This document shows, piece after piece, positions 8,816 to 40,387 of a stretch of DNA of 64,000 nucleotides (position 1 is its first letter; each line of letters begins with the position of its first letter). The stretch lies in the NCBI GenBank assembly GCA_024679065.1, contig JAGIQG010000004.1, positions 54,436,001-54,500,000 of the forward strand, written 5' to 3'. Position numbers and translations under genes: made by a program. Origin of the DNA: Sphyrna mokarran. Lineage: Eukaryota. The notes below the pieces were generated by a model. It had not been told where the DNA came from and searched no databases. It was given only the letters and a program-made list of their open reading frames with translations.

Positions 8816-8830
8816 CTGGCCTTGTCTAGC
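8816..8830 (-). other. Paralog B candidate 15-nt micro-exon (ARQGQ), phase 0-0
   Basis: ccttatttttacAG|GCTAGACAAGGCCAG|GTGAG, with strong splice sites on both sides. Confidence 0.55.
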
Positions 8831-13927: not shown

Positions 13928-13994
13928 CTACAGGAACAAATGATTGAAATAAGAAACTGCGCAACTTATACACAGTCATAAATAGGATGTAGAA

Positions 13995-16135: not shown

Positions 16136-16139
16136 ATTA

Positions 16140-18655: not shown

Positions 18656-18983
18656 ATGATACGGCACACTGGTCAGCACTGCTGCCTCAGTGCCAGGGAC
18701 AGATTTTGATTCTGGCCTTGGGTTCTATCTGTGGAGTTTGCACAATCTCCCCATGTCTGTGGGTTTCCTTAAGTGCTCTAACAGGGATGGATTAGCCATG
18801 GTAAAGACACAGTTATGAGAACAAGGCCTGAATAAGATGCTCTTTTGATGAGTTGATGCAAACTCAAATGACCTCCTGTGCTGTAAGTGTTCTATGATCT
18901 GCCCATGATACTGAGTGGTATGTTCTGAACTTGCTGTTTTCCTGCCAAGTTTAGGCTATTCTGTTTACTAGCTAAACAACTAG

Positions 18984-19183
<200 letters not shown>

Positions 19184-20588: not shown

Positions 20589-20610
20589 GTTTAATTTTAT
20601 TTATAACTGA
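20589..20610 (+). pseudogene. NUDT21: NUDT21 last coding exon (FNFIYN*), followed by presumptive 3' UTR to ~22150
   Basis: G TTT AAT TTT ATT TAT AAC TGA is the NUDT21 C-terminus. The acceptor reads TG instead of AG. Confidence 0.85.
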
Positions 20611-22339
20611 AGTTTATGAATATCTCAGACAATATCATGGTGACCATCTAAGTCCAGTTTCCATGAACATTGACCATGGCTTCTAACAGCCACGGACTTG
20701 ATCAGTTCTTCGAATCCAACCAGTGGCATTTTGTAGCACCTGCCCTGATTTGGCTGGTACTTCTGTTCAACTCTACAATAAATGAAGACAAAGAACTAAA
20801 TGGTGCATTTTTTTAAAGAAGAAGTGTTTCTTTCTGCTAGTGTAATGGTTGCATTATCTACTTTATTAAATGGATAAAATATCTTTTCTGAGGGTTTTAA
20901 TTGTAGAGAGATTTCACCCTGATCCTTTTGACTTTGTAATTGGATGTAACACCCCCAATCTAGTAGGATTGGCAATTCACTAAATGGATTTTGTGGCTTT
21001 GAGTTCTGTGACAGAAAGTGTTTCACTGCTCTTCTTGCTGTCCAACACAAATCTCATACATGTTTAATCTTGTTTATGATCAGATCTGGGACTCATGGGT
21101 TGAGATTTTAACTTTTATCTGTTTTACACAAATTAATGTTTTCTGCTCATTTCATGTGCTTAAATGTCCTGACTGCTGCTGGTTTGAGGGCCTGTCCAAC
21201 TTTCCCCAGTGTTTGCTGAGTATGATTTAAATTGTGTGAAGTATTTTAATCTTCAGAACAAAGCAATGCTCAGAATGATTGGGAACTGCAGTGAGTGCCA
21301 GATTGCAGGCAGTCATAACGCCGTTTGCAGATCTTAAGTTTTCTAAAAAAAACACATTGAGTCTTAAAACTATAAAGCACTAAACTGTTTTGAACTGCAC
21401 TAAAGTATTGAGGTTAGCTTGGGCTGTTCTTTTTTAAAAATGCAATTCTGAATGGTAATGAATGCAGATCTAGGGGTTTTGTGTTTCCAGTTGGTGGTTC
21501 AACAGTTAATTTATTACTAATTTTATATGGGAAAGATGTTGAGTTCTTTCTTACCAAGAAATCTGGAAGTTAGCATATGGGAATTATAGAATCATTATCG
21601 ACTGTAGTAGTTCAAAGCTCACTGTAACCTTGGTGATAAACGAGTTCTTGCCTGTATTATCAACTCTTGAAAATAGTATCTTTCCTGTCTTGAAGCTGTA
21701 TGTCCATAGTGTTGCCCAACTGGCAGAATAGAATGTTAGAACATCACGTTTGGCAGATGTAGGATGCAATTAATAGTGCTGTCAGTAGGATTGCTGTAAT
21801 CCTGTATAATTAAACGGCACTAAAAATGTTGCGGTTTATACAATATTTTGCCTTAAAATTGGCTGGTGCCAGGAGACAACTGTAAAGATAGTAAAATAAG
21901 AATGGGTCCATCATCAGTAGGAGAGATTTCAAAAAATATTACTTTAGTGTACAGCACTTGACTTTATATAGTCCTGCTGGCATTTGAACGTGCTATCACT
22001 GGTTTTGTTGGAGCTTTGACAATCTAAAAGAAATAAACAGTTGGTTTCACTCCATCTCCATCATCTTGGCCTCTGTTTCTTACCAGCTTTACACCCCCCC
22101 CCCCAACACCAAATAAAAATTTAAAACTGATCTCCATTTTCAGCAAAGTAGCTCTGTGGAATTTTATAATCTGTATATACAATCCCTCTATTCTTCGTTA
22201 TGGAACCTGACCAAGGTTTCTGTGTCTTCTGACCCATTGGAATTAGTTGATTTACAATTTTCATGCACAAGATTCACTAATGTTTTTAGCCAGCTGGCAC
22301 ATTTTATGTCACTACAATGAAAACTGCATTGGTTAACAG

Positions 22340-22577
22340 TCTGTGCCAGGGGCCTACGTGTGATTCCTGGCATGGGTCACTGTGTGGAGTTTGCACATTC
22401 TGACAATATCTATATGGGTTTCTTCCAGATGCTCCGGTTTTCTTTCACACTCCAAAATGTGCTGGTTAGGTTGAACATACTAAATTGCCTCGTAGCGTCG
22501 GTGGTTAGTAGGGTTATGGGTTAGGTCCTGTGTGGGATTGTGATTGGCCGTTTCCTGCACTATAGGAATTCTATGAC
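22340..22577 (+). mobile_element. V-SINE
   Basis: gtgtggagtttgcacatt, gctccggttt, tail ttctatga. Confidence 0.75.
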
Positions 22578-23760
22578 AGCATGGTTGGTGTCTGTTTGCT
22601 AAATTGTCTCCTTGATCCTGTTGGATCTTCGGGGTTGACTAACTGAACTGTACTTCTCTGGGAGCAGCACAAAAATGAAGCAACTTTTTAGTGGTTGATG
22701 TATTTAAAGTATTCTGACTAGTCTAGTTATGTTTTCTCCTTTTTAAAAGTAGGATTATGTTGTTGCAGGCAATCAGCTTATCTGTCCTTCTCTTGAAACT
22801 GGATAACTTATTCTTGAGTTCTATTAAACAGTCTGAATTTTGTGGAATGGTGGTGCATTGAATTTCTCATTATCCTATGCCACATAGTTGTTGATTACAA
22901 CACGTTTACTGTTGCCTCAGACAGAACAAATTTTAAAAAGAAAACTATTAAACACAAATATTTGTTTTTTTTAAGTTGAATTAATTGACAACTAACGCTC
23001 CACAATGAATCTTCAAATCTAATCTCAAACCATGGAAATTAAATGTTAAGAACTATCATAAACTGACGTTACAAAATCTGTATGACTTGGTTGATACCAT
23101 TTCAAACTTCAGTAAAATTATAACATTCTACCCAAAGAGATAAAATATTCACAAAGCCCTCTTGGTATGGAAAAGCACCTGATATTAGACTTGTTGCATT
23201 GGATAAGTGACCAATTCTCCTGTTTTACTACCTTGGCTTTGTGGATGCTCACCATTATTTTGTAGTTAATTGCAATAAATGAAACTGTATGGTTAATGAA
23301 CAAATATCAGAAGGCCTTGGGTCACAGTGGGTACCTGCTTCTGAGGCAGAAGCTCTGGGTTCAAGTCTGACTTCAGGAGTTGCTTGTCAAGAAAGGCTGG
23401 TCAAGGAATGTTGCTAAATAAGTTGAGTAACTTGTGAATCCTTAATGTACACCAAAGGTAGACAGTAAGAACAGGATAAATTTTCATCACATGGTCAGCC
23501 ATCCAATGGAAATTAATTGAAGCCTCTACCATCACTTCTCACTCACTCAGGGTACAACATAATGGTGCATTATTAGAGCAACAGACTCCTTGGAGGGTTA
23601 AATACCTGGTGTCTATTAGACTGGTACCAATATCTGCGGTAACCCCCAGACCTGATACCTTGTTATGAGTTCAGAGTGCTATAGGTTAGATCCTTCAGAC
23701 AAAGTTGAGGAATCAAATACTTGGACCTACATCTATAAAAAGCTCAATTTTGGATTGTTT

Positions 23761-23904
23761 TTAGATTTTCAACTTCTCTCTCTCTGTCACGTTTACTTCT
23801 GCATACTCGACATGTTTGTCTTGCTGTTTAGATTTTGACGTTTTCTTGATGTCAGCGAGCTGCAGAGTGGCGTAAGTCAGCTTGTTATCTCCGCGTTGTT
23901 TAGT
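23761..23904 (-). CDS. Gene A terminal exon with two ITIMs (TKQRGDNKLTYATLQLADIKKTSKSKQQDKHVEYAEVNVTEREKLKI*)
   Basis: Acceptor gttttcacAG, phase 0, TAA at 23761-23763. LTYATL and VEYAEV match the (I/L/V/S)xYxx(L/V) consensus and resemble the SIRP-alpha LTYADL...EYASV tail. Confidence 0.85.
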   Translation of the reverse strand, partial: TKQRGDNKLTYATLQLADIKKTSKSKQQDKHVEYAEVNVTEREKLKI

Positions 23905-26900
23905 CTGTGAAAACAATGTTTGATACCTGTTAACTCATCAGCTCATTACTTGAGGCAACTCGGTTTTTAAAAAGGCTGTCATGAAGTTTTCTCTCATTTC
24001 AAGTCACAATAAATAAAAACACGGCCCATCAAGTTTAAAGAATTCTCTTTGGAGCAATTTAGTCCCCTTTTCTCTTATGCTAAAGAAAAGTGGCCATCCA
24101 ATTTCCTTTTGAAATTATTGGTCTCTGTTTCCCTCTATCCCTGGCAGCCCACAAACCTATCTCCAAACTGTTCGTAACCCCACCCCCTTCCCCACGTCCA
24201 ATGAAGGTGTATCAATTAATGATCTGAGCTGTATCTGGAAATATACAAGGATCTTCTCTATCTGTATGGATTTGCATTTTTCATGATGCTGGTTTTGACA
24301 GGGGCGTTGTTACGTGAGTTTCTTATTTTGTGGTTTAGAACAATCATCACAGCCAGCCCCCAAAAGGAAACGGAGTCCAGTGCTCTTTTTATATTGCCTC
24401 TGATTACTTTTTCCAATTAAATCAGGTGGCGAAATGCTGGTGCTTTATTGGACGGAATAAAATGAGTCCTAAAGCCAAACCATCTTGTGCAGTTTCAGTA
24501 ATGATTGTGACAATAAGAGTGTTAATCCTGAATGAAAATAGTTTGGATATTAATTGCCCCTAGTCTCTCTGTCCTACCTGGGAATAGACAGTGTGCTCTC
24601 TCTCATGTCTCCGTTTGGAGAATCCATTGTCATGTTTCAAACTTAGACTGGCATAGGCAACAGTTTCCTTATTTGGTCCTTGTTGAACCTGCAGAGAGGA
24701 AAAGAAATGGCATATTAGCAGAGAGCTATCCATCATTTGGAACTGAGCTTGAGAATGAAAATATGTAGATGGCAATTGATAACATTAGGGTACCATTACA
24801 CACTAGCCACTGCTTTTTCCAATATTTCACAAATTATTTACCCGTATTTACAATTGAGGTGATCTCGAACATCACTAATAACTATCCTATGAATAGTACA
24901 AACAAATCATTTCCTCCCCCTTTTTCAACTATCTCATTTTACTTAATTTGACATGTATTTCTGCACATTCCATCCCTCGGTAGAAATCTCCAATTCCACT
25001 GCCTAACCCAGAGGATTAGTGTGCAGAACAATTCAGGCACCTGCAGCCAATCTGAATCAGCTAAGACAGCAGAAGCGGAGGTAAAAGCACATATCAATGT
25101 AAGGAATAGGAGTATTTGACCTCTTGGCACGCTCCACCATTCAATAGGTTAATGGCTGATTTGATCGGGGTCTCAACTCCACTTTCCTGTTTATTCTCTA
25201 AGAAGGAATTCCTCATCTTTTTACAAAGAGAGATGTGGTTGAGTGGCATTTGCTGTTTCATTCCATCTAAATAGTTTGAATGACATTCTACTGTTCAATA
25301 CTACATAGAAAATAGGAGAAGCCCTATCTTCTATATAGTATTGGCCCTTGGAGCCTGCTACCCTATTCATCACAATCATAGCTGATCGTCCAGCTCAATA
25401 GCCTAATCATGCTTTCTCCTCCTAAACCTTTAATCTCATTGACCCCAAGTGCTTTATCTTGCCGACTCTTGAATACATTGTGTTTTGGCATCAACTGATT
25501 TATGTGGTAATGAATTCCACAGGCTCACCACTTTGGGTGAAGAAATGTCTCCTCTTCTCTCTCCTAAATGGTCTATCTTCAATCCTCAGACTGTAACCCC
25601 TGATTCTGGATTCCCGCACACCGCCCCCCCGCCCCCGTCCCCGCACCATTAGGAACATCCTCACTGCGTCTATACTGTCTAATCCTGCTAGAATTTTATA
25701 AGTATCTAAGATTCCCCCCATTCATCTGAACTCCACTGAAAATAATCTTAACCTGGTTATTCTCTCCTCATACATTAGTCCTTATGTGACACGACTGAAG
25801 ACAGCAATTAATCACCTGAGCCCTAGCACATCAGTGCGGCACTTTCTCAGAATAGTGTCCTAGGTTCAATCACCTTCAGCTGCTTCATAAATGACTCATT
25901 CAATCAAATGTGGGTTTGACTGCGCAATGTTCAGCACTATTTGCAAATCCTAACATAATGAAGCAGCCCATGCACAAATGCAGCAGGACCCAGACAGCAT
26001 CCAGGTTTTGGTAAACAAATGACAAGTAATATTCATGACAGACAAATGCCAGTTAATGGCCATTTCGAATAAGAGATGGTCCATTGCCCCTTGATATTTA
26101 ATGAAATTACCATCACTGAATCCCAAACTATCAATATCCATTGACTGGAAACTGAACTGGATTAGCCATAAAAGTGCTGTCACTACTAGAGCACGATAAA
26201 AGTTAAGAATCCTGTGGCAAATAATTCATTTCTTGACTCTCCGAATCCTGTCCACCATCTACAAGGCAAAAGTCAGGAGTGTGATGGAATACTTTCCATT
26301 TGCCTGGATAAATGCAGTTCCAAAAACACTCAAAACGTTGGACACCATTCAGGACAAAGCAGCCTAATTAATTTATTGAGAAAAGGTATCAATCTACAAG
26401 ATGCATTGCAGGTGCACACTGAGGTTCCAAAGGCAGAGCTTTCCAAACACACGGCCATTACTGTCCAGAAGGATAAGGTCAGCTGATACCTGCAAACACC
26501 ACCACCTATAAGTTCTCCTCCAAGTCACTTAACATCTTGACTTAGAAATACATGCCAATCCTTCACTGACTTTGGGTGGAAATCCTGTGATTCCCTTGCC
26601 AACAGCACTGTGGGTGCACCTCAGGAACTGCAGCAGTTCAAGAAGGCAGCTTATCACCACTTTCTCAAGGGCAAATAGGGATGGTCAGCAAATGGTAGTT
26701 TTAAAAATGCATTTGTGGGATATGAGTGTCATTGGCTGGCCAGCATTTATTGCCCATCCCTACTTGTCCTTGAGAAGACAGTGCTGAGCCACGTTCTTCA
26801 ATCATTGCAGTCCATGTGCTGTGGGTTGACCCACAATGCCATAATGGAGGAAATTCCAGGGTTTTGACCAACCAACTGTGAAGGAACAGCAGCAATATAT

Positions 26901-29900
26901 TTCCAAATCAAGGTGGTAACTGCCTTTAAGGAGAACTTGTAGGGGGTTCTGCTCCCATGTATCTACTGCCTTTGTCCTTCAAGATGGAAGTGGTCATGGG
27001 TTTGGAAGGTGGCGTCCAGAATCATTGGTGAAGTGCTGCAAGAATCTCCTGGTTTTGGAACAATTTAAATTATGAAAATGTTATCAGTTGGATGAATATG
27101 TCACAATAAATATTAATGTTTATCTTGCCCTTTTAAATCATAGAATCCCTGCAGTGTAGAAAGAGGCCATTCAGCCCATCAGGTCTACACTGACTCTCAA
27201 CATAGCATCTTTCTTAGGCCCATCCAACACCCTATCCCCATTATCCTACACATTTATCTCCACTGTTCCCCCTATCCTACATGTTTTGGGATACTAAGAG
27301 ATAATTTAGCATGGCCAACTCTCCTAACAAGCACATCTTTGGACTGTGGGAGGTGACCAGACCAGCCAGAAGAAACCCACACAGACAGGAGGAGAATGTG
27401 CAAGCTTAATAGTGTGGAGGATGTGCTACCTTAATAATAATAATATGTGGGCAAAAACGAAGGAATTGATGCTGAAACATTATAGATGACTAGTAAGTTC
27501 TCATTGGCGTATTACGCTCCATTCTGAGAACAACATCGTTGGGAGTATTAGAAAGTAGGGGTAAGTTCAAGTGACCTCAGTCTGTACTGTTGGATATTAG
27601 AAATATGGTATGGATTTATGTGAGTTTAATTTAATGTTTCTGTGTAAGAAAGGATAAAACTCTGATTAGGTTTTTGTTAAACAAAGGTGCGTACATGTAT
27701 GAGATGGGAGGCGTGTTTGTTTCATTTTAAACTGTTTCTATTGTGATTACAGAGTTTACAGTTTAAAAAGTAAGTAAGGGCTTGGAGAAAGATTGAGCTC
27801 TTATTTAGCAGTTAGCCATCTTTAGGGAAAAAAGCCCATGTGTTTTTAATTTAACTGAACCCATGGTAGATAACTCTTAGCAGCTAGAGAGATAGCAGCT
27901 CATTCAGCTCCGCCAGAAACAAGACAGTGAATTAATAGGCAAGAATGTGAATCCCAGAAACTAAACCACAGTTAATTCTAGAAACCAGAGAATGAAAAGA
28001 GGGGTTGCAGGAAATTGAAGTTTTGAGAACAAGACTGAAAGAAACTGAACAATTGTACTATTTAAGAACAGCTGAAAAGTAAAGACCGAGGAATGTGGCT
28101 TAGTGAGAAACCAAAGGTCTGAAGTAATCATAGGGTTGATGATATCTTGTTGCAGCCTTTGAAGCAATAAGTGAAACAATTGTGAAGCAATTGGTGGTTC
28201 AATCCCTGAGAGGTTTTGTGGAAAACTCGAAAGCGTGTGGCTATTCAAGACAAATGAGTTACTGAAAGGATAGTTTTAAATCCTGGAAGTGAATCTTTTC
28301 TGGAAGTAGTTGAGGGAAAGCATTGTTTGAAAGAAGATTTTGAGACATGCCTTTTTGAGAATGATGATGTGGAGTTGTCAGCATTGGGGTAGGGTAGACA
28401 CAGTAAGTAGTCTCATAACACCAGGTTAAAATCCAACAGGCTTACTTGGTAGCACGAGCTTGTGGAGCTTTTGGAGAACTGTCCTTCATCAGGTGAATCT
28501 CTACTGTTGAAGGCACAGCTTTCTCAAAGCTCATGCTACCAAATAAACTTGTTGGACTTTAACCTGGTGTTGTGAGACTACTTACTTTCCGAGGGTGGAG
28601 TCTAAAAACGCTCGTGTGAATGCTGGAATCCAGTGATGTTAGTTGACTCACAGTGTAATAAGCATCTGGGAGATTTGAGGAAAAACACTTAGAAGTTCGA
28701 TTGGGTGGCGTCTGCCGCTGGATTTCAGAATGGATGTTATCTGATCACAGTTAGCCTGTTGCGTTACAAGGATTGTGTATTTACTGCGAATATTCTAGCC
28801 TAAGATGTATTTTGTAACCTGTGTTTTCCTTAAGATTTTCTGTTGTTAAAAGCAAACTTACAGTCCTGTGACTCGGTTCATCCACTTTTCTAAACTAAAA
28901 TGTAAAAGTTACGGTCTTTTGAGTGAGGACCTATTCTGGGACCTTCCCTTCAGTGGCAACATCACCTGGGATTGTAACGGAAGAATGCAAAGCTTGGGAG
29001 CAGTTGTCCATAGATTTACTAGAATCGTACTGGAGGGAGGGACTCACGTTAGGGAGACTAGAGAACCTATTATTGTTCTCCTCACAACAGAGAAAGAGAA
29101 AGTGTGTTTAAAATTGGGAGAGATTTTGACGAGTAAATAAGGAGAGAGTGTTTTCAATCGTGGGTGGTTCAATGTCCAAGAGACAGAGACTTCAGATCAT
29201 CAAAATCATCAGAGATAGATGAGAGTTGTTGTCTGGAATACACTTCCTGGAAAATTGAGGCGTGGGTGGGGAGGGGAGGGGGGGAGGGGGTGCAGGACAG
29301 ACGCAGATTCCCTTGAATAAATAAAAATGAAAGATCATATGTAATGAGTGGGGAATTGGGCTAAATGAATAATTATCTCAACTAAGTGGCACATAGAGAA
29401 TAGCCTCTTTTAGGAGCTGCTACTTACTTCTTTCGATGCATTTCAGTTCTACGCTTCTAATCGTCACCCATGCAGATGGTGGGCAGGGAGAAGGAAGAGG
29501 ACTGCCTCTTGGATCTGGGTAAGTTGGTCGTTAAGGCAACTGGCAGTCAAGTTGGTCACCTGCCCCTTCACTGCGGCTACGTTCACAGCAAGCTGGATTT
29601 AGAGAGGGAACAGGCTATGTCTGCTGACAGATTTCAGTTCGATAGGCGCCATGGGGACTGATGGTGCATGACTGTGCCCTGTTACTGACATTTATGGTTT
29701 AGTTAATTAAGTTCTTCTACCATTTGTTTTAGTTATAATGTCCACCGGCGCTATCATCCTCTGTCCTTTTGATCAATACCGTAAGAAGTCTCACAACACC
29801 AGATTAAAGTCCAACAGGTTTATTTGTAGCAAACGCCACTAGCTTTCGAAACTGGCTGTTCCTTCGTCAGGTCAATGCGAGTTCAATCCCAGTGCATCTC

Positions 29901-32900
29901 AACATCATAACTTTTGATTAATATCAACTTTTCGTTCTTTTGTAAGATTAAAAAAATGAATTAACTATTTATCGGATTGATTGAAATATTTATTTCTATT
30001 CCTCCGTATTCCACCTTTTTGGAGCATAAAAGATATTGTCTTCTTACCGTCTCATCATTCTGACCGGCTTCCACGGAATTTCTTTTGGCACCTAGAGAAA
30101 AGAAGAAATTGAGTTTGAGTAACTTTCTGAATGTAAGTAAAATCAAAAACATGCTTTCCATTCTGAACACTTTTACTACCAAAAAGAAGGAGCCTTGAAA
30201 ATTTGAAAATTCTACTGTGATCTACCTCCAATGGAGCACACTGTCTTTAGCGTGATGATGACAAACATGTGACAAGAGAGTCGCTAAGTTACAATTGAAA
30301 TACCACCAGAGGGAGACGTAAAACAGTCTGCCAGTTCCATATTAGCCATTTCACATTGTCGCAGGAAATTAATTAAGAGTGTTTACACTACAAGGTCCTG
30401 ATATTTTTAAAAATGTGGAACATTAAGAAGGTGTACAAATTGAAAAAAAAACAGTTCGAATGGGAAAATTGAATATTTGCATTTCAAAATTAATTTGCGT
30501 TGCCATATTCAACTCTGTGGTTCAAGGCGGGACTCCACGATGGTCGTTTGCCTCCCTGGAGCAGGGGTGCAAGATGTATCAGACAGGGTAGAGGGCATTT
30601 TGAAGGGTAAGGGGACCAAGGCGGATGTGATTATTCACGTAGGAGAGAAGGATGTAGGAAGGAAGAGCAGGAAAATTATACGAAGGCAGTTCAGGGAGTT
30701 GGGGGGTAGGCTGAAGAGCAGGGCCTCCAGGGTGGCGATCTCAGGGCTGCTTCCAGGGCCGGGTAATAGTGGAGCCAGGAAAAATGAGATCCTACAGCTG
30801 AATGCGTGGCTGAAGGACTGGTGTAGGGCAGAGGGTTTCACATTTGTGGATAACTGGGAAATCTTTGTGAAAGAAGGGCACTTGTATAAAAGGGATGGGG
30901 AACACTTAAATGGGAAGGGCATGAATATCTTAGCTGGGAGGTTAGCTGGATTGTTTCGGCAGGATTTAAACTAATATGGGGGGGGGGGGTGGGGGGCCTG
31001 ACACGATAGCTCGATAGAGAGCGAGATGGGAGATACAGTAACCTTGGATGAGAAGAAATATACTAGGGAGAAGGAGGTTCTGAGTGGTCTTGGAGGTCTG
31101 GAGTGTGTCTGTTTCAATGCGAGGAGCATAACAGGAAAAACAGATGAACTTAGGGCCTTAATGTTTGCGAAGAACTTGGATGTGGTTGCGGTGACGGAGA
31201 CGTGGTTAAAGGAAGGGGGGCAGTGGCAACTGAACATTCCTGGGTATAAGTGTTTCAGGCGTGACAGGGGAGGGGTCCAGAAGAGGTGGAGGAGTGGCGT
31301 TGTTAGTTAAGGAGAGCATCACGGTGTGCAGAGGGAGGACAATACAGAGGAGTTAGGAGCAGAGTCGCTGTGGGTGGAGTTGAGGAATAGAAAGGGGGCG
31401 ATTACTATGCTAGGGGTGTATTATAGGCCACCCAACAGTCTGCAGGTAGTTGAAGAAGGCATATGTAAAAACATTTTGGATAGGTGTAGAAAGAACAGAG
31501 TCGTTATAGTGGGAGATTTTAATCTCCCTAGGGTGGATTGGAAAGTACCTAGAGCTGAGGTTTTGGACAGGCAGGAATTTGTAAAATGTGTACTGGAAGC
31601 ATGGTTGGAGCAGTATGTGGCTAGCCCGACGGGAGAAGGGGCTATATTGGATTTAGTTCTGAGTAATGAGCCAGGGCGGGTGGTTGATGTTGTAGTATGG
31701 GAACATGTGGCTAACAGTGACCACAATTCTGTCTACTTTGGGGTACAGATGGAAAAGGATGCTTGTTGCCCTAGGGGCAGGGTGCTGAATTGGGGGAAGG
31801 CTAACTACGGTCGGATTAGGCTGGAACTTATGGAAACTGATTGGGAATAGTTGTCCGAGGATAATCCACGCTAGGCATACGGGACTCTTTCAAGGGAATA
31901 CTGAAAATGTTCCAAGATAGATATGTGCCGGCTCAGAGGAAAGATGGGAAAGGTAGGATTAGAGAGCCGTGGATTACTAGGGATATTGAGGACTTGGTTA
32001 GGAAGAAAAGAGAGGCGTACGATAGGTCAAAGCAGCTGGGAACGGAGATAGCGTTGGAGGAATATAGAGAGAGTAGGAGGGGGCTCAAACGGGGAGTTAG
32101 AAGGGCAAAAAGGGGACATGAAATGTTTTTGGCAGATAGGATTAAGGAAAATCCAAAGGCTTTTTACTCCTATGTTAGGAATAAAAGGGTGGTTAGAGGA
32201 AAAATCAGACCTCTTAGGGACAGAGGAGGGGAACTGTGCTTAGAGCCCGAGGGAATGGCGGAGATCCTGAATGAATACTTTGCATCGGTATTCACGAAGG
32301 AGAGGGGCTTGTTGACAGGTCCTGTCTCTGAGGGAGCTGTGGACCAGTTGAGGGAAATATCCATACGAGGGAGGAAGTGTTAGAACTTTTAGGTAGCATT
32401 AAAACTGATAATTCTCCGGGGCCTGATGGAATTTATCCCACGCTGCTTAGGGAGATGCGAGGTGAAATTGCTGGGCCTCTGACGCAAATCTTTGTCTCTT
32501 CTTTGGACACAGGTGAGGTCTCAGAAGACTGGAGAATAGCTAATGTTGTACTGTTGTTTAAAAAGGGTAGTAGGGATAACGCTGGGAATTATAGGCCGGT
32601 GAGTTTGACATCAGTGGTAGGGAAGCTGTTGGAGGGGATTCTTAGAGATAGGATGTATAGGCACTAAGAGCATTGCGATCTGATTAGGAATATGCAGCAT
32701 GGATTTGTTAAGGGGAGGTCGTGCCTGGTAGAATTTTTTGAGGAGGTGTCGAAAACGGTGGACGAAGGGCGAGTCTTTGAAGTCGTCTATATGGATTTTC
32801 GTAAGGTGTTTGACAAAGTCCCTCATGGGAGGTTACTGGAGAAGGTCAAGGCTCATGGGATACAAGGACAGATAGCTAGATGGATAAGTAACTTAGTAAT

Positions 32901-35900
32901 AGGAAACAGAGAGTAATGGTGGAAGGGTGTTTTTCTAGCTGGAGGTCGGTCACTAGTGGCATGCCGCAGGGCTCAGTACTAGGATCTCTTCTATTTGTAA
33001 TATATGTAAATGACTTAGAAGAGGGAGTAAGTGGAGTGATCAGCAAGTTTGCAGATGATACAAAGAGGGCTGGGCTTGCGGATAGTGAGGAGCATTGTCA
33101 GGCGATGCAGCAGGACATAGACAGGCTGGTAGCTTGGGCAGACAGATGGCAGATGGAATTTAATCCTGATAAATGCGAGGTGATGCATTTTGGGAGAAAG
33201 AATGTAGAGGGGAGGTACATGATAAAGGGTAGACCTATTAGGAGTACAGAAACACAGAGGGACCTGGGGGTGCAGGTGAACAAGTCTCTGAAGGTGGCAG
33301 AGCAAGTGGAGAAGGTTGTGAAGAAAGCATATAATATGCTAGCCTTTATAGGAAGGGCTATAGAGTACAAGAGTTGGCCTTTAATGTTGCAGTTGTATAA
33401 AACGTTGGTTAGACCTCATTTGGAATACTGCGTCCAGTTCTGGTCGCCTTACTACGGGAAGGATGTGGGGAGTCTGGAGAGAGTGCAGAAGAGGTTTACC
33501 AGGATGCTGCCTGGCATGGAAGGTCTGAGTTACGAGGAGAGGTTAGTCAAATTGGGACTGTTTTCCTTAGAAAGACGTAGACTTAGAAGAGATTGAATGG
33601 AGGTGTACAAGATTATGAGGGGTATAGATAGAGTAAACAGGGTTAAGCTTTTTCTTAGGATGGACTCGAATAACACGAGGGGTCACGGGCTTAGGGTGAG
33701 GGGGGTAAAGTATAATTTGGATGCTAGAGGGAGTTTTTTCACACAGAGGATGGTGAGGGTATGGAATGCGCTGCCAAGTAAAGTGGTGGAGGCAGGTTAC
33801 TCTGGAGTTATTTAAGAAATATTTAGATGGGCACATGAACAGAATGGGAATGGAGAGGTATAGAAAACTGATTTAAAATAGGGATCATGAGCCTTGGGGG
33901 TGCCCGGGAAGTGTGTAAATAGATGATGATATTGATGTACTTGTTTTTATCCTACAGGTGCTTTGGTCCACCTTGTTGTCTAACGAGGGGCATACACGCG
34001 ATGAGTGGTCAGAGGGCTGCTTTTGGATTTTTTTCGAGAGTATCCTACTGCTTCACGTCGTTAGTGTACGCTTGAGCTGGACCATTTGATGGGCAACACA
34101 ACATCTCAGCGACTATCGCTGTGCTGTGCAGATACATGGATTTGGGCCTGTGTCTGTGGGAGTTTGCGCATTCTCCTCGTGCTTGCGTGGGTTTTCTCCG
34201 GGTGCTCCGGTTTCCTCCCACATCCCAAAGATGTGCTCTTAGGCTAATTGGAAAAACAAATTCTCCCTAAATTGTCTCTAATTTGATTTTTAATCCATAG
34301 ATCTATAAACATGGACATGGATCGCGGGTAGTGGTGGGAACATTGGGATGGCGGCGCGGGCTCGTTGGGCCGAAGGGCCTGTTTCCCGTGCTTTTTTTTG
34401 TTCTTAACCACATAACGCACTTGAGGTATCAACTCCGGTATTTAAAAGATTCAGCAGGGTGTTCTCTATTCTGTACAATGAAGCAGTATCACCCGCCGTT
34501 TATGTCTTAACAGTTTAATTGGGCATAACAAAATAAAAGTTTGCGGTGAAATAAGAAAATTTCTTACCAGATGAAGCTTTTAATCTGAGTCTCGTCAAAA
34601 TAATTATCAACAATATAACAGCCAGTATGCCACCTGCACATCCGAAAATGTGCGTAAGGTTGATTTCTGAAATATTTACAAGATAAACAAATGATTGAAA
34701 TAAAAAATTATAGAACATAGCAAGATTTATACACGATTTTGTGTCTAGCACGGGAGGGCGCGGCGCAAAGTTGTCTTTCCTGTAATTGTGTCCATTTATT
34801 CTGCGTGGGGACCGACAATTTATTTCTATAGGCAGTAGCGATAAAAGGATTATAATGTGTCCCATACAACAGTAACGCAATTTATGGAGGAGACAAATCT
34901 ATAAAGGCGCAGGAAACTCCTCTCTAGGTTTGAGGCCTTTTCGGTCAGAGTAAAAGGACTTACACTTGTGATACACCAAACAGATGCGCACCGGCTACGA
35001 AGGATAGCAAAGTTTTTCACTCTTCAGCACGTCAACCGGTGAACACTACTGCAGCTCTTAGTAGGTAACAAGAACAACTTGCATTTAACATTCCAAAACG
35101 CCTAAATGCAGCTTTATCAAACATAATCAAACCACAATCAAACCGCTGGAGGTAGAATTCAGGGAGCGTCGAAAATGAGACAATTGGAAAGGCGGGGATA
35201 CTTAGAACGGGAATTGGATTCAGACAGCGGAACGCACTGTGTGGAAATAACGATTTTATAATACATCAAAATCTAATATTTAGGATGTAAAAGTGACAAC
35301 TAAAACTGAACATTTTTATTTGTGCGTTTATTTCGTTTGGCAAGAATTTGACGAGGAATAAGCACATTGGACCATAGAAAAGTTAAACCACAAAAGGAAG
35401 CCACTCGGCTCATCTTGTCCATAGCAGCTCGTGGACACCAGGTGTCCTTTCTAATCTCACCTTCCTGCGGAAGTTCCGGCCCATAGCCCTGTGGCTTATT
35501 TAAGGTGCAGATCGAAGTACTTTCCTAAAAAAAAGAACGTTGGGTCTCTGCCTCCACTAACTCAGGCAGCGTATTCCAGACACCCACCATCCTTTGTGTA
35601 AAAAAAAGACATTCCTTGTGTCTTCTCTACACTTTCTGCCACTTATATTAAATCTATGACCCCTGTTTCTAGAATTCTCCGTCAAGGGAAACGATTTCAT
35701 CCTGTCCATTCTATCTCTTCCCCTCATAATTGTGTACACTTCTGTCAAGTCACTTCTCAGATTTCTTTATTCCATGGAAAATAATCTCAGTCTATCGAAT
35801 CTCTCTTCACAGCAACACTTTTCTAGCTCCGGCAATCTCCCGTTTCAGGAAAATGTTCTCCCTCCTCCAGCTAGAAAATATCTTAATCATTTTAATTCGT

Positions 35901-38900
35901 TACCATTGAAGTGACTTTGAGATCAAACAAAGTCCATAATAACCCTGTAAATTCGAGTTTGAACAGTTGCCCAGCTACATTAATAATAAATAATACAAAT
36001 CGCTGTCTTTACCTCTGCTCGTTTCGGTAAATGTTTGGAATCTTACCTTGATTGACAGTGTAGCTGACGCTGGCGGGCATCTTAAGGGAGATATGAGATG
36101 CCAGACATGTATAAACGACTCTGTTCTGGAGAGACTGTGCTTCTTCCAAAGAACTGGAGACCTCAAAAAGACCATCCACTGTCTCGTTTCTCACAGTTTC
36201 TATTCCGGCCAAAATTTCCACACCATCTCTACGCCAGGAGATTTTTAAACCCTCCGGGTAAAATGCAGCCGTTTTGCACTCGAATCGTAGAGAAGTCGCT
36301 GAATTATCTTTAATCCGAACGATTTTCAATGGTGTTGGAGGAACTTTTAACAGGGGGAAAAATCATTTTTGTATTGAAAAGAGTAAATTCTCAATTGCCG
36401 AACTCGATATGCTTTTACGCTCATACTGTAATAATAGTTATCGTGCTGTCGCGTTTTTTAAACTTCGGGCGTGCGTTTATTTTATATAATGTTATACGAC
36501 GCTCAGCAAAATTGCCGGATATTTTGCAAGCGGATCATTCTCCCAGACATGGTTACAACCAGGGGAGAAAGTGTCACTGTTCGGAATTAAAGCCATGATG
36601 TGGAGATACCGGCGTTGGACTGGGGTAAATACAGTAAGAAGTCTCACAATATCAGGTTAAAGTCCAACAGGTTTATTTGCCAAATACATGATTATTTGCC
36701 AGATAAAAAAATACTTGCCAAATAAATCTGTTGGGCTTTAACCTGGCGTTACTTCTGACGGAATTAAAGCAACAGATCCTGGCGCGGGATTGTGTTTGGC
36801 AGCAGTGACCTCCATTCAGATTCCGGTCCGAATGTATCAGTCAGGGAGCACCAACCAGTCAGCACGAACATTGGGTTCTATTCGGATTTTTCTGGAAGAA
36901 TCATTGTGGTACTAAACGTTGTGTGTTCGTTTGAAAAATGACCTACTTCAAACATTTAATGTCTCCAAACTTATTTTGCTTTGTTGATTAATGTTAAGAT
37001 GCGTGAAATCAAAATACCTCTGATTTCTAAATTGGCTCCAGACAAGATGTAATGATATGTATAGATTAAAACCCGTGAGTTACTATTGATTACTATTGAT
37101 TCTTGAACATTTCAATGTCCAAGGTCGAGGTTTCAGATTGTGCATCTTTCACCAAAATATCTTTCTGGGGCCGGGATGTGTATGTTGGAGTATTTCGCAA
37201 GCCAGGATAATTTTTGATAATTGTATATCGCTATGCAGATCACAACACCCAGGGATTAATTCCAGAAATAAAATGTTGGGTAAACTGAGCTGGTTTGACT
37301 GAGTTTTCATTTCAGATTTCCAGCATCGCAGTATTTTGCTTTTATTTGATTGGTAGTTTACTTTTCTGCAGTTTTATTCCATCTGCTGTCTGGAGAAGAT
37401 TCTGTTTCGAGCAGTTCAAAGTTCCAATTTTCCGATGAGAAACTGTCTATCTGTCTATCGGTTTTCTACCTCAACTTCCGTCAGTTCATGGGGACAATGC
37501 ACCGAAGTAATGAACTACATATACCAGGTTTATAGAAATGTTCGGTGGTATCCATTCCCCTCTTTACAGTTGTGAGTGCATCATCGAAAGTCCAATTGGC
37601 GCACCCCAGAAGTTCAAACAAGGGTTTCGAGCACTTTAACTGTCCTGTAAAGTCTAGGACCCCGGGGTTGGAATCCAGCATTGAGGGAAAGATCAAAACC
37701 CTCCTTCTCAGTGGATTGTAGAATTCCATTGTGGAAAGATCTTGGGATTTCAAACAAGTTCCTAATGGACACAATTACAACATATAAACTGTTATGTTAG
37801 GAACAGGCGCCCATTCAGCCTGATTCTTTGTGCTCTGCCAACCTTGGTGATAGTGATTAGTACTGCTGTCTCACGACGCTAGGGAGCGGGGTTCAATTCC
37901 GGCCTCGGGTCGGTGTGGAGTTTGCAGGTTCTCCCCTTGTCTGGGTGGATTTCCTCCCGATGCTCCGGTTTCCTCCCACAATCCAAACATGTGCTGATTA
38001 GATGGATTGGCCCTACTAAATCGCCCCTTAACGTTAGGTTGTTTGGCAAGGTAAACACCTGGGGGATGCGGCCTGGATGCGATTGTTGTCGGCGCAGGTT
38101 CGATGGGCCAAATACTGTAGGTATTCTATAATTCTGCCTGATCTCTAACTTAACTCCATTTGTCCGACTTAATTCATTCTTAGCAAAAATCGTGCCGTCA
38201 CAAATTTAAGGCAATGACAAAGAAAGTGTTACATCGGCAATTTCGAACAATGGGCGGAAAAGGAATCTGATTTTGGAAATACTTGTTGCTGTATTGGGGA
38301 ATTTTCACCTGCATTTATTATGAAGGCACTACGAGTGAGGGTTCAGAAAAGATTTATTGGAGATTTATCAAGGTCAAGGGATTTAGGTTATATGCAGAAA
38401 CTGAAGAAACTACGGTTGTTCTCTTTAGATCTGATAGTTTTAAGATGAGGCCAATTTTGATAAAGTCAGTAAGCAAAAACTGTTCTCAGTGACACAAGAG
38501 TCGGCAACCAAAATGTGTTTGGCAAAAGAACGCAAGGATTCTGATCTTTGAGTGGAACGTAATTACTCTGTTATTGTTACCATGTTGTTCAGCTTAAATC
38601 GCGAGCAGTGTGTAGGGATCCCGATTGCTTTTCGCTTCCTGGTTAAATCAACTAACTCGGCAGAGAGCGCATTTCGAAACGGTCCTTAATCAACTGAAGC
38701 GCCGTGAATAACCGCTCTTACTTTCCTCGAAATCTTCTTCTTGCAATCACCTTTGCGGGGGAAGGTGGGGGCGAGGGGTGGAGGGTGATGTGTTACTCCG
38801 TGCAGTTCTCGCCCCGCACGCTGCCAATATTCCTTCCTCTTTGATGTAAATTAAATGATTTTTGAAGTTTGGTAAAACATTTGACCTGGGAGATGTTAGG

Positions 38901-39869
38901 ATTGCTTACATTGTTCAATTGTAACACCGTTGCGGCGACAAAGAACCAGACCCTGACATTTCATCACAACATCAATGCAAAATACTGCAGGGGCTGTACA
39001 TTTGAAATACAAATGGAAAATATCGGGAATGTTCAGAGGTCGGGCAATACCTGTGTAGAGAAACTGAGTTAACGTTTCGGATCATTTCGTCATCGACATG
39101 AAATGTTAACTTTGTTTCCCTCCATAGAGAGAACTGACCTTTTGAGGTTATTTCGTGTATTTCCATTGCTTAATTTCAAAATGAAAATATCCACTATACA
39201 TCGAGGTCAGTGGAAAACAATCCAGTGTTCTGTAAAAAGAATTCGTTAAAACCAGCTTTTCCTCCGGTGATAAAAAAAATCACGCCGAGCTGAAAGCCTC
39301 CAGTTTACAATTACACCTACCGTATACAGTAAGCTGGGTGCCAGTTCCAGTTTCAATAGATTTTTCTAGATATTTTACTTTACAATAATACACTCCGGAA
39401 TCTGCAAAAGTCACATTCAGGAATTCAAGCGAACTACTTCCCTTGCCCGCATCAAATCGCTTTCTGCTGTCTGGTTCGAGAAAGGATTGCTCTCCATGTT
39501 TCCACCAATGAACATCGGGCATATCAGGAAATAAGGGAAATGTGCAGAGTATGGAAGCATTCGCACCTGTGCTCACGTTCAAGTATTTAGGGATCTGAAC
39601 CACTTTGGCCCAAGTTACTCCGGCGGCTGTCAGGAAGGGAACAAAGGCGGTGATGTAAAAGATAAAGAAAAATATCTGAGAGAAGTAAATTATAAAAATA
39701 AGCAATCGAATTAGAGGAGCACAATATCCAATTTTACAGTAAGTAACAGCTGCAGAAACTTTTAAATTAGGACCTGCCGTTGTAAAATCGGCAGCATCTA
39801 ATAACGAAATGTACCTGGCCAAAACACGCCCAGAAGAGCCATGTAGTGAACTGTAACTTGTATCGACAT
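23761..39869 (-). CDS. Gene A: SIRP-like / non-rearranging antigen-receptor-like inhibitory IgSF receptor (leader-V-C1-TM-cytoplasmic 2xITIM), 314 aa; join(39815..39869,39321..39626,36047..36343,34568..34666,30048..30091,23761..23904)
   Basis: Six exons assembled by hand. All introns are GT-AG with compatible phases (1,1,1,1,0), giving a 945-nt open frame. Domain motifs are listed under the individual exons. Confidence 0.85.
24215..24330 (-). pseudogene. Decayed alternative tyrosine-motif exon of gene A (homolog of 7983..8093)
   Basis: Aligns with the paralog-B exon (KTSIMKNANP..QIEKILVYFQI vs KTEIREKANPRQKEESIVYSKI). The acceptor and first Tyr are deleted and the frame is shifted. Confidence 0.6.
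28403..28586. repeat. Palindromic (fold-back) Penelope-terminus element
   Basis: gtaagtagtctcataacaccaggttaaaatccaacagg ... cttgttggactttaacctggtgttgtgagactacttac inverted pair. Confidence 0.75.
29781..29876 (-). mobile_element. Penelope terminus with hammerhead motif
   Basis: Minus strand CTGACGA-a-ggaac(agcca)gtttc-GAA-AGCT-A followed by the same terminal sequence as the other copies. Confidence 0.65.
30048..30091 (-). CDS. Gene A exon 5, cytoplasmic (GAKRNSVEAGQNDET)
   Basis: Acceptor ttcttcttttctctAG, donor ACG|GTAAGA, 44 nt, phase 1-0. A homolog of the same length lies at 13374..13417. Confidence 0.82.
30510..34408 (+). mobile_element. CR1 LINE, long but inactivated (ORF1 esterase fragment, APE endonuclease, RT) with long 3' UTR; inserted in gene A intron 4
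   Basis: VVCLPGAGVQDV (SGNH-esterase-like ORF1); CFNARS, VTETW, VGDFN, SDH (APE); PQGSVLG, KFADD, RPHLEYC (RT). Several stops and frameshifts. Confidence 0.95.
34568..34666 (-). CDS. Gene A exon 4, transmembrane (EINLTHIFGCAGGILAVILLIIILTRLRLKASS)
   Basis: Acceptor atatttcAG, donor G|GTAAGA, 99 nt, phase 1-1. Hydrophobic helix followed by basic stop-transfer residues. Confidence 0.9.
36047..36343 (-). CDS. Gene A exon 3, Ig C1-set domain
   Basis: Acceptor tttccccctgttaaaAG, donor G|GTAAGA, 297 nt, phase 1-1. C1-set motifs FECKTAAFYP, ISW, YTCLASHISL. Confidence 0.93.
37845..38135 (+). mobile_element. V-SINE in gene A intron 2
   Basis: gggttcaattcc, gtggagtttgc, tgctccggtttcctcccaca. Confidence 0.8.
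38630..38731. promoter_or_regulatory. Candidate intronic enhancer: Ets-IRF composite element and STAT GAS site
   Basis: GGAAgcGAAA on the minus strand (38630-38639) and TTCCTCGAA (38723-38731) in a CpG-containing, apparently unique stretch of the V-C1 intron. Short motifs that could be chance. Confidence 0.3.
39321..39626 (-). CDS. Gene A exon 2, Ig V-type domain with germline-encoded J-like G strand
   Basis: Acceptor ttcccttcctgacAG, donor G|GTAGGT, 306 nt, phase 1-1. Motifs VVQxP, ILCTF, VHWWK, DSGVYYC, GTGTQLTV. Confidence 0.93.
39815..39869 (-). CDS. Gene A exon 1, signal peptide (MSIQVTVHYMALLGVFWP)
   Basis: ATG at 39869, hydrophobic core, phase-1 donor CAG|GTACAT. Joins the V exon to give ...FWPAAGVTWA-KVVQ. 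Confidence 0.7.
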
Positions 39870-40387
39870 GTTGCATTTCGTTGGCTACATACTGCAAATG
39901 ACAATGCTGCCTACGATGGTTTGCTAAGTAATAAATTCCATCGTTAAATTTCCGAAACGTGTGATCATGACATCAAAGATCCCATGATTGAAACAGCGTA
40001 TTGTGTTCGTTTACATTGGGGAGGGGGAGAGGTGGGGGAGGAAGGTCGCTGTAGAAGCTGACCTCCTAACCGGAAGACTATCACTTAAAGATCATTGTTT
40101 TTTTGCAGCCTTTTTCGGAACACTTCGTCCCGGATTTTCTTTGTCAATACCAGACTTTGATTCTTCACTTAATCCTGAAAATAAAGATGCCCGCTGCGGG
40201 CGGCCTTCCACCGCTTCATCTGAAATACCCTTCTTCCTGTTGGAGCGTAAAGTCTGCAAATATTTAGACCTGAGTACTTTGAACTGAGTGCTATCGGACC
40301 TCAAGCAACTTCCAGCCATCTGACTTGTAGCAGAATCATTGGAATAACCATTCAGATTAACAATCTTTCTATATTAGTTGCACTCCA

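What the first reader, a model, noticed from the sequence alone, without database searches (positions are those of the whole stretch)
23761..39869. Intact non-rearranging VJ-C1 inhibitory receptor: antigen-receptor-like ectodomain on a SIRP-like double-ITIM tail
Seen: one exon encodes a V domain including the J-type GTGTQLTV strand, followed by a single C1-set domain, an uncharged TM and LTYATL/VEYAEV. No RSS heptamer-nonamer was seen around the V exon. Known: C1-set domains are largely restricted to Ig/TCR, MHC/B2M, tapasin, B7-H6 and SIRPs. Mammalian SIRP-alpha is V-C1-C1, while V-C1 is the TCR/light-chain layout. Inference: a cartilaginous-fish innate inhibitory receptor family resembling a pre-RAG antigen-receptor precursor, probably annotated only as 'SIRP-like' if at all.
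Basis: partly seen in the sequence, partly recalled or inferred. Interest (0 to 1): 0.85.

Follow-up and report, generated by a model that had tools for sequence, protein, structure and literature searches.

The report
Shark SIRP-like V-C1 inhibitory receptor gene
This is an intact shark gene for a cell-surface receptor with one antibody-like variable domain, one constant domain and an inhibitory signalling tail, a member of a large, little-studied cartilaginous-fish family that resembles mammalian SIRP-alpha.

Summary
On the minus strand, 39869-23761, seven exons with AG/GT borders and matching phases give 351 codons: leader, one-exon V+J, one C1-set domain, an uncharged TM and three tail exons. 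No RSS was found.

The tail has four tyrosines, not two: VAYASL, TVYSQ-T, LTYATL and VEYAEV, spaced 23/13/23.

The gene belongs to a large family. Every named member I saw is from a shark, ray or chimaera. Pipelines label them SIRP-alpha-like, SIRP-beta-like, NCR3LG1-like, tapasin-related-like, Ig-lambda-like or TCR-beta-like. Best identity is 72-77%, to Scyliorhinus canicula. Some relatives have short tails and an Arg in the TM, so the family looks like a paired inhibitory/activating set.

AlphaFold and fold searches confirm a true C1-set domain and a compact V lacking C''. It is not UrIg2.

Orthology to tetrapod SIRPs is unresolved, and so is the "pre-RAG precursor" reading.

No RNA run was listed, so expression and splicing are unshown.

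First-stage notes flag sister copies elsewhere in this genome; none was followed up.

The parts
39815..39869 (-). Exon 1: start codon and most of the signal peptide (55 nt, ends in phase 1, donor gtacat). Split leader with a 188-nt intron.
   Evidence: Sequence read. tblastn of Heterodontus P0154 residues 1-19 matches 39869-39813 at 58% identity. Phases and borders. An out-of-frame ATG lies 7 nt upstream.
39321..39626 (-). Exon 2: end of leader plus a compact V domain with a germline-joined J-like G strand (GTGTQLTV). Cys27 and Cys81 of the exon translation, Trp40, three N-x-S/T sequons.
   Evidence: Pfam V-set 5e-12 (46.4 bits, cut-off 26) and I-set 1.7e-9. AlphaFold pLDDT 91.3, with only one bridging residue between strands C and D. 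Foldseek and VIA matches to VNAR, TCR V-alpha, V-lambda and NCAM Ig1 are tied.
36047..36343 (-). Exon 3: single C1-set domain (starts VPPTPLKI; Cys22, Trp36, Cys79, YTCLASH).
34568..34666 (-). Exon 4: short stalk with an N-L-T sequon, an uncharged transmembrane helix and an RLRLK stop-transfer.
   Evidence: 83% identical over 30 residues to Heterodontus P0154.
30048..30091 (-). Exon 5: 44-nt juxtamembrane exon that restores the frame (phase 1 to phase 0).
   Evidence: borders ctctag | ... | gtaaga. Found through the P0154 alignment. Phase arithmetic.
24578..24688 (-). Exon 6: first tyrosine pair, VAYASL (canonical ITIM) and TVYSQ, 23 residues apart.
   Evidence: 57% identical to P0154/P0160.
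23761..23904 (-). Exon 7: second tyrosine pair, LTYATL and VEYAEV (both canonical ITIMs), 23 residues apart, then TAA.
   Evidence: 69% identical to Heterodontus P0154/P0162. The first AATAAA lies 2245 nt downstream.
30477..33836 (+). Decayed non-LTR retrotransposon inside intron 4, on the opposite strand. Not part of the gene, but it explains the long intron and the GC skew.
   Evidence: ORF pieces. Pfam GDSL-like ORF1, Exo_endo_phos_2 and RVT_1. Copies at 52179-53931 (91.6%) and 61542-63771 (86.5%).

Best explanation
This is an intact gene for a type I membrane receptor of a cartilaginous-fish family that works like SIRP-alpha.

Shown: the ectodomain is a germline-joined (non-rearranging) compact V domain followed by a single C1-set domain. 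The TM is uncharged. The tail carries two pairs of tyrosines, each pair 23 residues apart, and three of the four lie in canonical ITIMs.

Inferred from how SIRP-alpha and other ITIM receptors work: ligand binding by the V domain leads to Src-family phosphorylation of the tail tyrosines. Each bis-phosphorylated pair docks the tandem SH2 domains of an SHP-1/SHP-2-type phosphatase, which damps activation of the cell that carries the receptor.

Sequence-based inference: relatives in other species have similar ectodomains but short tails and an Arg in the TM. They probably pair with an ITAM adaptor, which would make the family a paired inhibitory/activating receptor set evolving by tandem duplication.
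For: Gene model:
- Seven exons with AG/GT borders and consistent phases give 351 codons without a stop.
- Every exon has a counterpart in a RefSeq model from Heterodontus francisci, P0154.

Domains:
- Pfam V-set and C1-set are above their cut-offs.
- Both AlphaFold models have pLDDT 91.3.
- All 46 listed Foldseek rows and all 50 listed VIA rows for the C1 model are class II beta-2 or Ig light-chain constant domains.

Tail:
- Among 41 family proteins with ITIM tails, spacing between successive tyrosines peaks at 23 (42 cases) and 22 (13), and at 14 (22) and 16 (12). This gene's spacing is 23/13/23.

Family:
- An all-library HMMER scan with the C1 exon gave 405 hits at E<=1e-3.
- 110 of the 196 proteins stored by then are family-like.
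- All named family members are chondrichthyan, and many are labelled SIRP-alpha-like or SIRP-beta-like.

SIRP affinity:
- The ESM Atlas places homologue P0154 nearest to SIRP-alpha clusters, 0.96 with 205 of 256 features shared.
- A family profile hits the SIRP-alpha ectodomain 2wng at 1.7e-30 and SIRP-gamma at 6.2e-27.
- In a C1 tree the family (SH-aLRT 93) joins a group holding lungfish 'SIRP-alpha-like' domains (82). It is separate from UrIg2 and from MHC-I alpha-3.

Paired forms: 24 family proteins have tails under 45 residues, and by my eye 9 of them have an Arg in the TM segment printed.

The SIRP-alpha mechanism is taken from passages of the review PMC12975943.
Against: - No RNA run was listed, so expression and all six junctions are unshown.
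- An out-of-frame ATG lies 7 nt upstream of the start codon.
- After splicing, the second tyrosine motif reads T-V-Y-S-Q-T, which is neither an ITIM nor an ITSM.
- The ectodomain does not single out SIRP. With the family profile, Ig chains (135 bits) and UrIg2 (128 bits) score above SIRP-alpha (109 bits), and single light chains reach about 90 bits.
- With the C1 exon alone, no SIRP is among the best 60 PDB sequences.
- The layout is V-C1, not the V-C1-C1 of mammalian SIRPs.
- A search with a family tail found only Callorhinchus proteins. Tail homology to SIRP-alpha is therefore not demonstrated here. The resemblance to its four-tyrosine tail is recalled, not computed.
- No ligand is known.
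Confidence: 0.72

Rival explanations
1. The family is an independent cartilaginous-fish invention, derived from an antigen-receptor-like, UrIg-like or B7-H6-like V-C1 ancestor. It reached a SIRP-alpha-like ITIM tail by convergence and is not the counterpart of tetrapod SIRPs.
For: - Every named family-like protein is chondrichthyan.
- Of the 10 non-family hits named, 8 are from bony vertebrates. These are multi-C1 proteins scoring only 24-61 bits per domain with the family HMM, against 116 bits or more for family members.
- There is one C1 domain rather than two.
- The C1 exon's best PDB matches are UrIg2, Ig, B7-H6 and class II beta, not SIRP.
- ITIM tails arise repeatedly in IgSF receptors (general knowledge).
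Against: - The C1 tree puts the family next to lungfish 'SIRP-alpha-like' C1 domains (SH-aLRT 82) and away from a verified UrIg2.
- The Atlas features of a homologue are nearest to SIRP-alpha clusters.
- SIRP-alpha and SIRP-gamma rank 7th and 15th of 12296 PDB matches with the family profile, although each has only three domains.
Confidence: 0.3
2. This is a living relic of the non-rearranging V-C1 receptor that the RAG transposon invaded.
For: - V and J lie in one exon, directly followed by one C1 domain and a TM, which is the layout of a TCR chain.
- It has a split leader with a 188-nt intron.
- The V model matches shark VNAR and TCR V-alpha as well as anything else.
Against: - The J-like strand lacks the F/W of FGXG.
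- The same argument applies to all SIRPs (PMC2785349).
- UrIg and UrIg2 have linkage to the MHC and to Ig/TCR loci in their favour (PMC12227049).
- First-stage notes place the MHC genes of this genome on other pieces (unchecked).
Confidence: 0.08
3. The gene is silent or recently dead, one decaying copy in a birth-and-death cluster, despite its open frame.
For: - A decayed partial copy lies 10 kb downstream.
- Retrotransposons fill the introns.
- No RNA run was listed.
- There is an upstream out-of-frame ATG.
Against: - 351 codons over seven exons are open, and all twelve splice signals are intact.
- All invariant and nearly invariant family residues that the alignments report in window-exon numbering are, by construction, present in the window exons.
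- Both domains fold with pLDDT 91.3.
Confidence: 0.1
4. It is a ligand of the B7-H6/NCR3LG1 type (V-C1, presented to another cell's receptor) rather than a receptor.
For: - Several relatives are labelled NCR3LG1-like.
- B7-H6 chains match the C1 exon at E about 2e-6 to 6e-6.
Against: - B7-H6 is not among the best 60 PDB matches with the family profile, while SIRP-alpha and SIRP-gamma are.
- The tyrosine cassette with conserved spacing, and the short-tail relatives with an Arg in the TM, are features of paired receptors.
Confidence: 0.06

Closest known systems
SIRP-alpha (PTPNS1/SHPS-1) and the SIRP paired-receptor family
   Same: - N-terminal V domain with a germline-joined J-like strand, followed by C1-set domain(s), a TM and an ITIM tail.
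- Paired short-tail members with a basic TM residue.
- Annotation pipelines name many relatives SIRP-alpha-like or SIRP-beta-like.
- The family profile hits 2wng at 1.7e-30.
- The SIRP features are taken from PMC12975943 (passages) and PMC2785349 (abstract and passages).
   Different: - One C1 domain instead of two.
- A compact V with 53 residues between the cysteines and no C'' strand.
- Orthology, CD47 binding and SHP recruitment are untested.
- The family is expanded in tandem over megabases, according to unchecked first-stage notes.
UrIg / UrIg2 (shark non-rearranging antibody-like genes)
   Same: - Single-exon VJ with a split leader, followed by C1-type domains, in elasmobranchs (PMC12227049).
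- UrIg2 (9dmx) is the top PDB sequence match of the C1 exon, 2.2e-13 summed over three domains.
   Different: - UrIg2 has nine to eleven C domains, and the paper describes no ITIM tail.
- The best single UrIg2 domain scores only 23 bits with the C1 exon.
- A verified UrIg2 (P0007, 1.3e-142 to 9dmx) falls in another part of the C1 tree.
TCR chains and Ig light chains
   Same: - V-J-C1 order. TCR chains also share the TM.
- The V and C1 models superpose on TCR V-alpha, V-lambda and light-chain constant domains.
   Different: - V and J are joined in the germline and there is no RSS.
- The tail is long and carries ITIMs.
B7-H6 (NCR3LG1)
   Same: - V-C1 ectodomain.
- The name is given to several relatives.
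- It matches the C1 exon at about 1e-6.
   Different: - It is not among the best 60 PDB matches with the family profile.
- B7-H6 is a ligand without paired activating forms (recalled).
NITRs of bony fish
   Same: Recalled, not tested: V domains with a J-like motif, ITIM tails or a charged TM, and large tandem clusters.
   Different: Recalled: the second domain, where present, is not C1-set. No NITR appeared in any search here.

Membership tests
SIRP family | Membrane-distal V-set domain with a joined J-like G strand | tested here: met
   One exon, 39626-39321. Pfam V-set 46.4 bits against a cut-off of 26. SIRP-alpha, -beta and -gamma D1 chains match at 3e-4 to 7e-4. The domain is compact and also passes I-set.
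SIRP family | [quoted passage not shown] | tested here: not met
   Only one C1 exon lies between the V and TM exons. There is no second Ig exon in the 1380-nt intron before the TM exon or anywhere else in the window.
SIRP family | Cytoplasmic ITIMs that recruit SHP-1/SHP-2 (alpha type) | tested here: inconclusive
   Three canonical ITIMs and a fourth tyrosine form two pairs, each 23 residues apart. Phosphatase binding is not testable with these tools. A tail search reached no tetrapod SIRP.
SIRP family | Paired activating members with a basic TM residue | tested here: inconclusive
   By my eye, 9 of 24 short-tail family proteins from other species carry an Arg in the printed TM segment. No such exon is in this window. 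Adaptor binding is untested.
SIRP family | Common descent with tetrapod SIRPs (trees, synteny) | tested here: inconclusive
   The C1 tree joins the family with a group holding lungfish 'SIRP-alpha-like' domains at SH-aLRT 82. That lungfish protein ties between SIRP-alpha (9e-22) and IgA (1.4e-21) in the PDB. No mammalian SIRP, TCR, IgL, class II, tapasin or B7-H6 rows were available. Synteny was not tested.
SIRP family | CD47 binding by D1 | not testable with these tools
   No binding data, and no CD47 search was made.
C1-set Ig domain | C1 sequence signature and seven-strand C1 fold | tested here: met
Rearranging antigen-receptor V gene segment | V and J separated, each flanked by a heptamer-spacer-nonamer RSS | tested here: not met
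   V through J is continuous in one exon. There are 0 exact RSS in the window. One loose hit near the exon is within background.
UrIg / UrIg2 | VJ followed by several C1-type domains, grouping with UrIg C domains | tested here: not met
   It has a single C1 domain. That domain lies in a different part of the tree from a verified UrIg2 and a white-shark homologue.

The most novel reading that the evidence does not exclude
The family is the direct cartilaginous-fish counterpart of tetrapod SIRPs and keeps the ancestral form: a non-rearranging receptor shaped like a TCR chain (V-J-C1-TM), with a two-by-two tyrosine cassette and activating partners. SIRPs would then have begun as one-C1 paired receptors at the base of jawed vertebrates, with the second C1 of mammals a later duplication. 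That would give a living model of what a V-C1 receptor did before or beside RAG-based rearrangement.
Probability: 0.3. Interest if true: 0.6.

Novelty: new variant of a known kind. Interest (0 to 1): 0.45.

Why it matters
C1-set domains are almost confined to antigen receptors, MHC molecules and a few associates. Non-rearranging genes that join a VJ exon to a C1 domain are used to reason about how Ig and TCR arose.

This gene shows that sharks carry, besides UrIg and UrIg2, a large family of V-C1-TM receptors with SIRP-alpha-type inhibitory tails and likely activating partners. I found no paper on that family. In databases it hides under six unrelated automatic names.

If it is the SIRP counterpart, it dates the SIRP paired-receptor system and its tyrosine cassette to the common ancestor of jawed vertebrates, and it suggests a one-C1 ancestral form.

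It also matters for annotation. Labels such as 'Ig lambda-like', 'TCR beta-like', 'tapasin-related' or 'FcRn-like' on these genes are misleading.

Tried and rejected
- **Direct TM-to-tyrosine-exon splice.** Joining the TM exon straight to the first tyrosine exon gives a stop, because the phases are 1 and 0.
- **Candidate linking exon at 29097-29048.** This block is conserved with the downstream copy. I rejected it because neither AG gives an open frame. The true 44-nt exon is at 30091-30048.
- **RNA evidence.** The look-up of sequencing runs listed no run, so read laying had nothing to work on and was not called.
- **Reaching tetrapod SIRPs.**
  - A search with P0154 gave 31 hits, all chondrichthyan.
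  - A search with the family alignment gave 38 hits: 36 chondrichthyan and 2 weak teleost Ig proteins.
  - A search with the tail of P0053 gave 2 hits, both Callorhinchus.
  - These searches work by shared words and within a length window, so the blanks do not show absence.
  - As a result I could not build V or C1 trees against real SIRP, TCR, IgL, class II, tapasin or B7-H6 sequences.
- **Ectodomain exons for the downstream partial copy.** None was found in 13900-23700. The best DNA match has E 0.08 and the best protein match E 0.1. A look-alike of the start of the C1 exon at 16442-16266 is not significant.
- **VNAR relationship of the V domain.** VNARs lead the Foldseek list, but VIA ties them with NCAM I-set, TCR V-alpha and V-lambda. 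I therefore claim no special VNAR relationship.
- **Literature.**
  - Six answered searches found no paper describing a chondrichthyan SIRP-like V-C1 family. The library lacks most subscription journals.
  - PMC10530332 (the UrIg paper) and PMC3805090 are not held.
  - Supplements were not opened; those of PMC12227049 and of the shark genome papers could mention these genes.
- **Joined model.** Full-length searches used database proteins of other species instead.

Full report
**What is there**

Reading the sequence around each open stretch gives seven exons:

| Exon | Coordinates | Length | Content |
|---|---|---|---|
| 1 | 39869-39815 | 55 nt | leader |
| 2 | 39626-39321 | 306 nt | V with J |
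| 3 | 36343-36047 | 297 nt | C1 |
| 4 | 34666-34568 | 99 nt | stalk and TM |
| 5 | 30091-30048 | 44 nt | juxtamembrane |
| 6 | 24688-24578 | 111 nt | first tyrosine pair |
| 7 | 23904-23761 | 144 nt with TAA | second tyrosine pair |

- All acceptors end in AG and all donors begin with GT.
- The phases run 0/1/1/1/1/0/0, and the total is 351 codons plus stop.
- The Ig exons are flanked by phase-1 introns, as is usual for IgSF genes.
- The 44-nt exon was not obvious. The TM exon ends in phase 1 and the next tyrosine exon starts in phase 0, and a direct join gives a stop.
- I found that exon because a RefSeq protein of Heterodontus francisci (P0154) aligns to it, as it does to all the other exons.
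Every search used single exons of the window or full-length database proteins of other species.

**Domains**

*V exon*
- It passes Pfam V-set (46.4 bits, cut-off 26) and also I-set (38.1 bits, cut-off 23.7).
- It has only 53 residues between its two cysteines.
- In the AlphaFold model (pLDDT 91.3) there is a single bridging residue between strands C and D, so C' is minimal and C'' is missing.
- Foldseek lists shark VNAR domains first.
- The G strand carries G-T-G-T-Q-L-T-V but lacks the F/W of the classical J motif.

*C1 exon*
- It passes Pfam C1-set (31.8 bits, cut-off 21), while the C2-set models stay below their cut-offs.
- It models at pLDDT 91.3.
- The C1-set call is therefore sound.

*Other features*
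- The TM core has no charged residue.
- No RSS is present: 0 exact matches and one loose hit within background.
- V and J are continuous in any case.

**The tail**

After splicing, the tail holds four tyrosines, with successive spacing of 23, 13 and 23 residues:
- V-A-Y-A-S-L
- T-V-Y-S-Q followed by T
- L-T-Y-A-T-L
- V-E-Y-A-E-V

Three fit the ITIM consensus. The second fits neither the ITIM nor the ITSM consensus.

The same cassette recurs across the family. In 41 family proteins with ITIM tails, spacing between successive tyrosines peaks at 23 (42 cases), 14 (22), 22 (13) and 16 (12). Conservation of the spacing from chimaera to sharks and rays argues for function. A distance of about 23 residues suits docking of tandem SH2 domains, as in SIRP-alpha. 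That last step is inference from the known mechanism (PMC12975943, passages).

**The family**

An all-library HMMER scan with the C1 exon gave 405 proteins at E<=1e-3, 133 at 1e-10 and 5 at 1e-30.

With a family HMM, 110 of the 196 proteins stored by then score 150 bits or more in one stretch and are at most 560 residues long. Their make-up:

| Class | Count |
|---|---|
| TM, tail of 45 or more residues, at least one canonical ITIM | 41 |
| TM, tail under 45 residues | 24 |
| TM, long tail, no canonical ITIM | 13 |
| No TM by my crude rule | 28 |
| Skipped for lacking the YxCxVxH motif | 4 |

Every family protein whose name I saw is chondrichthyan. The species are Scyliorhinus canicula and S. 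torazame, Heterodontus francisci, Heptranchias perlo, Mustelus asterias, Cetorhinus, Carcharodon, Hemiscyllium, Chiloscyllium, Stegostoma, Pristiophorus, Pristis, two Mobula species, Narcine, Hypanus, Hemitrygon, Leucoraja and Callorhinchus.

Their automatic names are inconsistent: SIRP-alpha-like, SIRP-beta-1-like, NCR3LG1-like, tapasin-related-like, Ig lambda-like, TCR beta-like and FcRn-like.

The window's exons are at best:
- 72% (V) and 77% (C1) identical to S. canicula proteins;
- 57-69% identical (tail exons) to Heterodontus proteins.

The exact gene is therefore not among the proteins I retrieved. In the C1 tree the window groups with the two S. canicula proteins (SH-aLRT 96), inside a 13-row clade (97) that includes rays.

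Among the 24 short-tail proteins, nine by my eye carry an Arg in the printed TM segment, several with a V/F-D-H ending. That suggests activating partners. One of them (P0003) has the V domain closest to this gene's. No such TM exon is in this window.

**Relation to known families**

Evidence pointing towards SIRP:
- With the family profile, the SIRP-alpha ectodomain (2wng, 109 bits) and SIRP-gamma (98 bits) rank 7th and 15th of 12296 PDB matches. They fall behind multi-domain Ig chains (135 bits) and UrIg2 (128 bits) and just ahead of single light chains (about 90 bits).
- The ESM Atlas puts the Heterodontus homologue nearest to SIRP-alpha clusters, at 0.96.
- In a quick C1 tree of 67 rows over 100 columns, the family is one side of a branch (SH-aLRT 93). 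It joins a group holding lungfish 'SIRP-alpha-like' domains (82, unstarred). It is apart from MHC-I alpha-3 and from a cluster holding teleost Ig-like domains and UrIg2 (90).

Evidence against, and caveats:
- With the C1 exon alone, no SIRP is in the best 60 PDB sequences. UrIg2, Ig, B7-H6 and class II beta lead.
- The UrIg2 label in the tree is verified: P0007 matches 9dmx at 1.3e-142.
- The lungfish label is weak: its PDB matches tie between SIRP-alpha (9e-22) and IgA (1.4e-21).
- The tree lacks mammalian SIRP, TCR, IgL, class II, tapasin and B7-H6 rows, because no tool gave me those sequences.

My reading is that it works like SIRP-alpha. It is not UrIg or UrIg2, and it fails the V-C1-C1 criterion of mammalian SIRPs. 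Its descent relative to SIRPs is open.

**What is known in print**

- The idea that a V plus C1 receptor such as SIRP is close to the antigen-receptor precursor is old (PMC2785349, abstract and passages).
- SIRP is listed among the joined-VJ IgSF members (PMC11599192, one passage).
- UrIg and UrIg2 are the published shark non-rearranging candidates (PMC12227049, abstract, section 7 and passages; PMC10751288, passages).
- I found no paper on a chondrichthyan SIRP-like V-C1 family in six answered searches.
- The library lacks most subscription journals, and I could not see supplements.

**Surroundings**

- Intron 4 holds a decayed non-LTR retrotransposon on the plus strand. Two further copies are in the window.
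- A partial, decayed copy of the gene's 3' half lies downstream at about 13922-7326, without V or C1 exons.
- First-stage notes, unchecked, report sister genes 5.8 kb beyond the window's end, 22 kb before its start, up to 8 Mb away, and on another piece. They place the MHC genes on other pieces.

**Verdict**

- Expression is unshown, because no RNA run was listed.
- I rate it a new variant of a known kind, of moderate interest.

Noticed in passing
window 7326-13922, minus strand: A partial, decayed copy of the gene's 3' half. The TM exon (13922-13854) runs straight into two stop codons. There is a juxtamembrane-like piece near 13430-13362, a first tyrosine exon (8819-8721, A-Y-A-T-L and T-I-Y-S-Q kept), and a last exon (7429-7326) broken by a frame shift between its two tyrosine motifs. 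No V or C1 exon was found upstream of it within 13900-23700.
   Followed up: partly
window 30477-33836 (+), with copies at 52179-53931 (-) and 61542-63771 (+): A non-LTR retrotransposon with a GDSL-esterase-like ORF1, an AP endonuclease and a reverse transcriptase, broken into at least eight ORF pieces. The copies are 86-92% identical, so the family was active fairly recently.
   Followed up: partly
window 23905-23934, minus strand (end of intron 6): The intron sequence just upstream of the last exon translates to a decayed copy of the '...TVYAQ' end of a tyrosine exon (Y replaced by F, stops upstream). In Heterodontus P0154 an extra tyrosine stretch is present at this place, so the cassette grows and decays by tandem duplication.
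   Followed up: partly
window 39874-39876, minus strand: An out-of-frame ATG lies 7 nt upstream of the start codon that homology supports. It could lower translation if the transcript starts upstream of it.
   Followed up: no
database proteins P0003, P0166, P0033, P0038, P0119 and others (other species): Short-tail relatives share a distinct TM with an Arg near its outer end and a V/F-D-H at its inner end. This is a candidate adaptor-pairing signature worth testing against shark DAP12 and FcR-gamma.
   Followed up: partly
database proteins P0001, P0008, P0176 (Callorhinchus and others): Some gene models contain two C1 domains or a C1-V-C1 order. They may be fused neighbours or real exon duplications. 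If real, V-C1-C1 forms exist in chimaeras.
   Followed up: no
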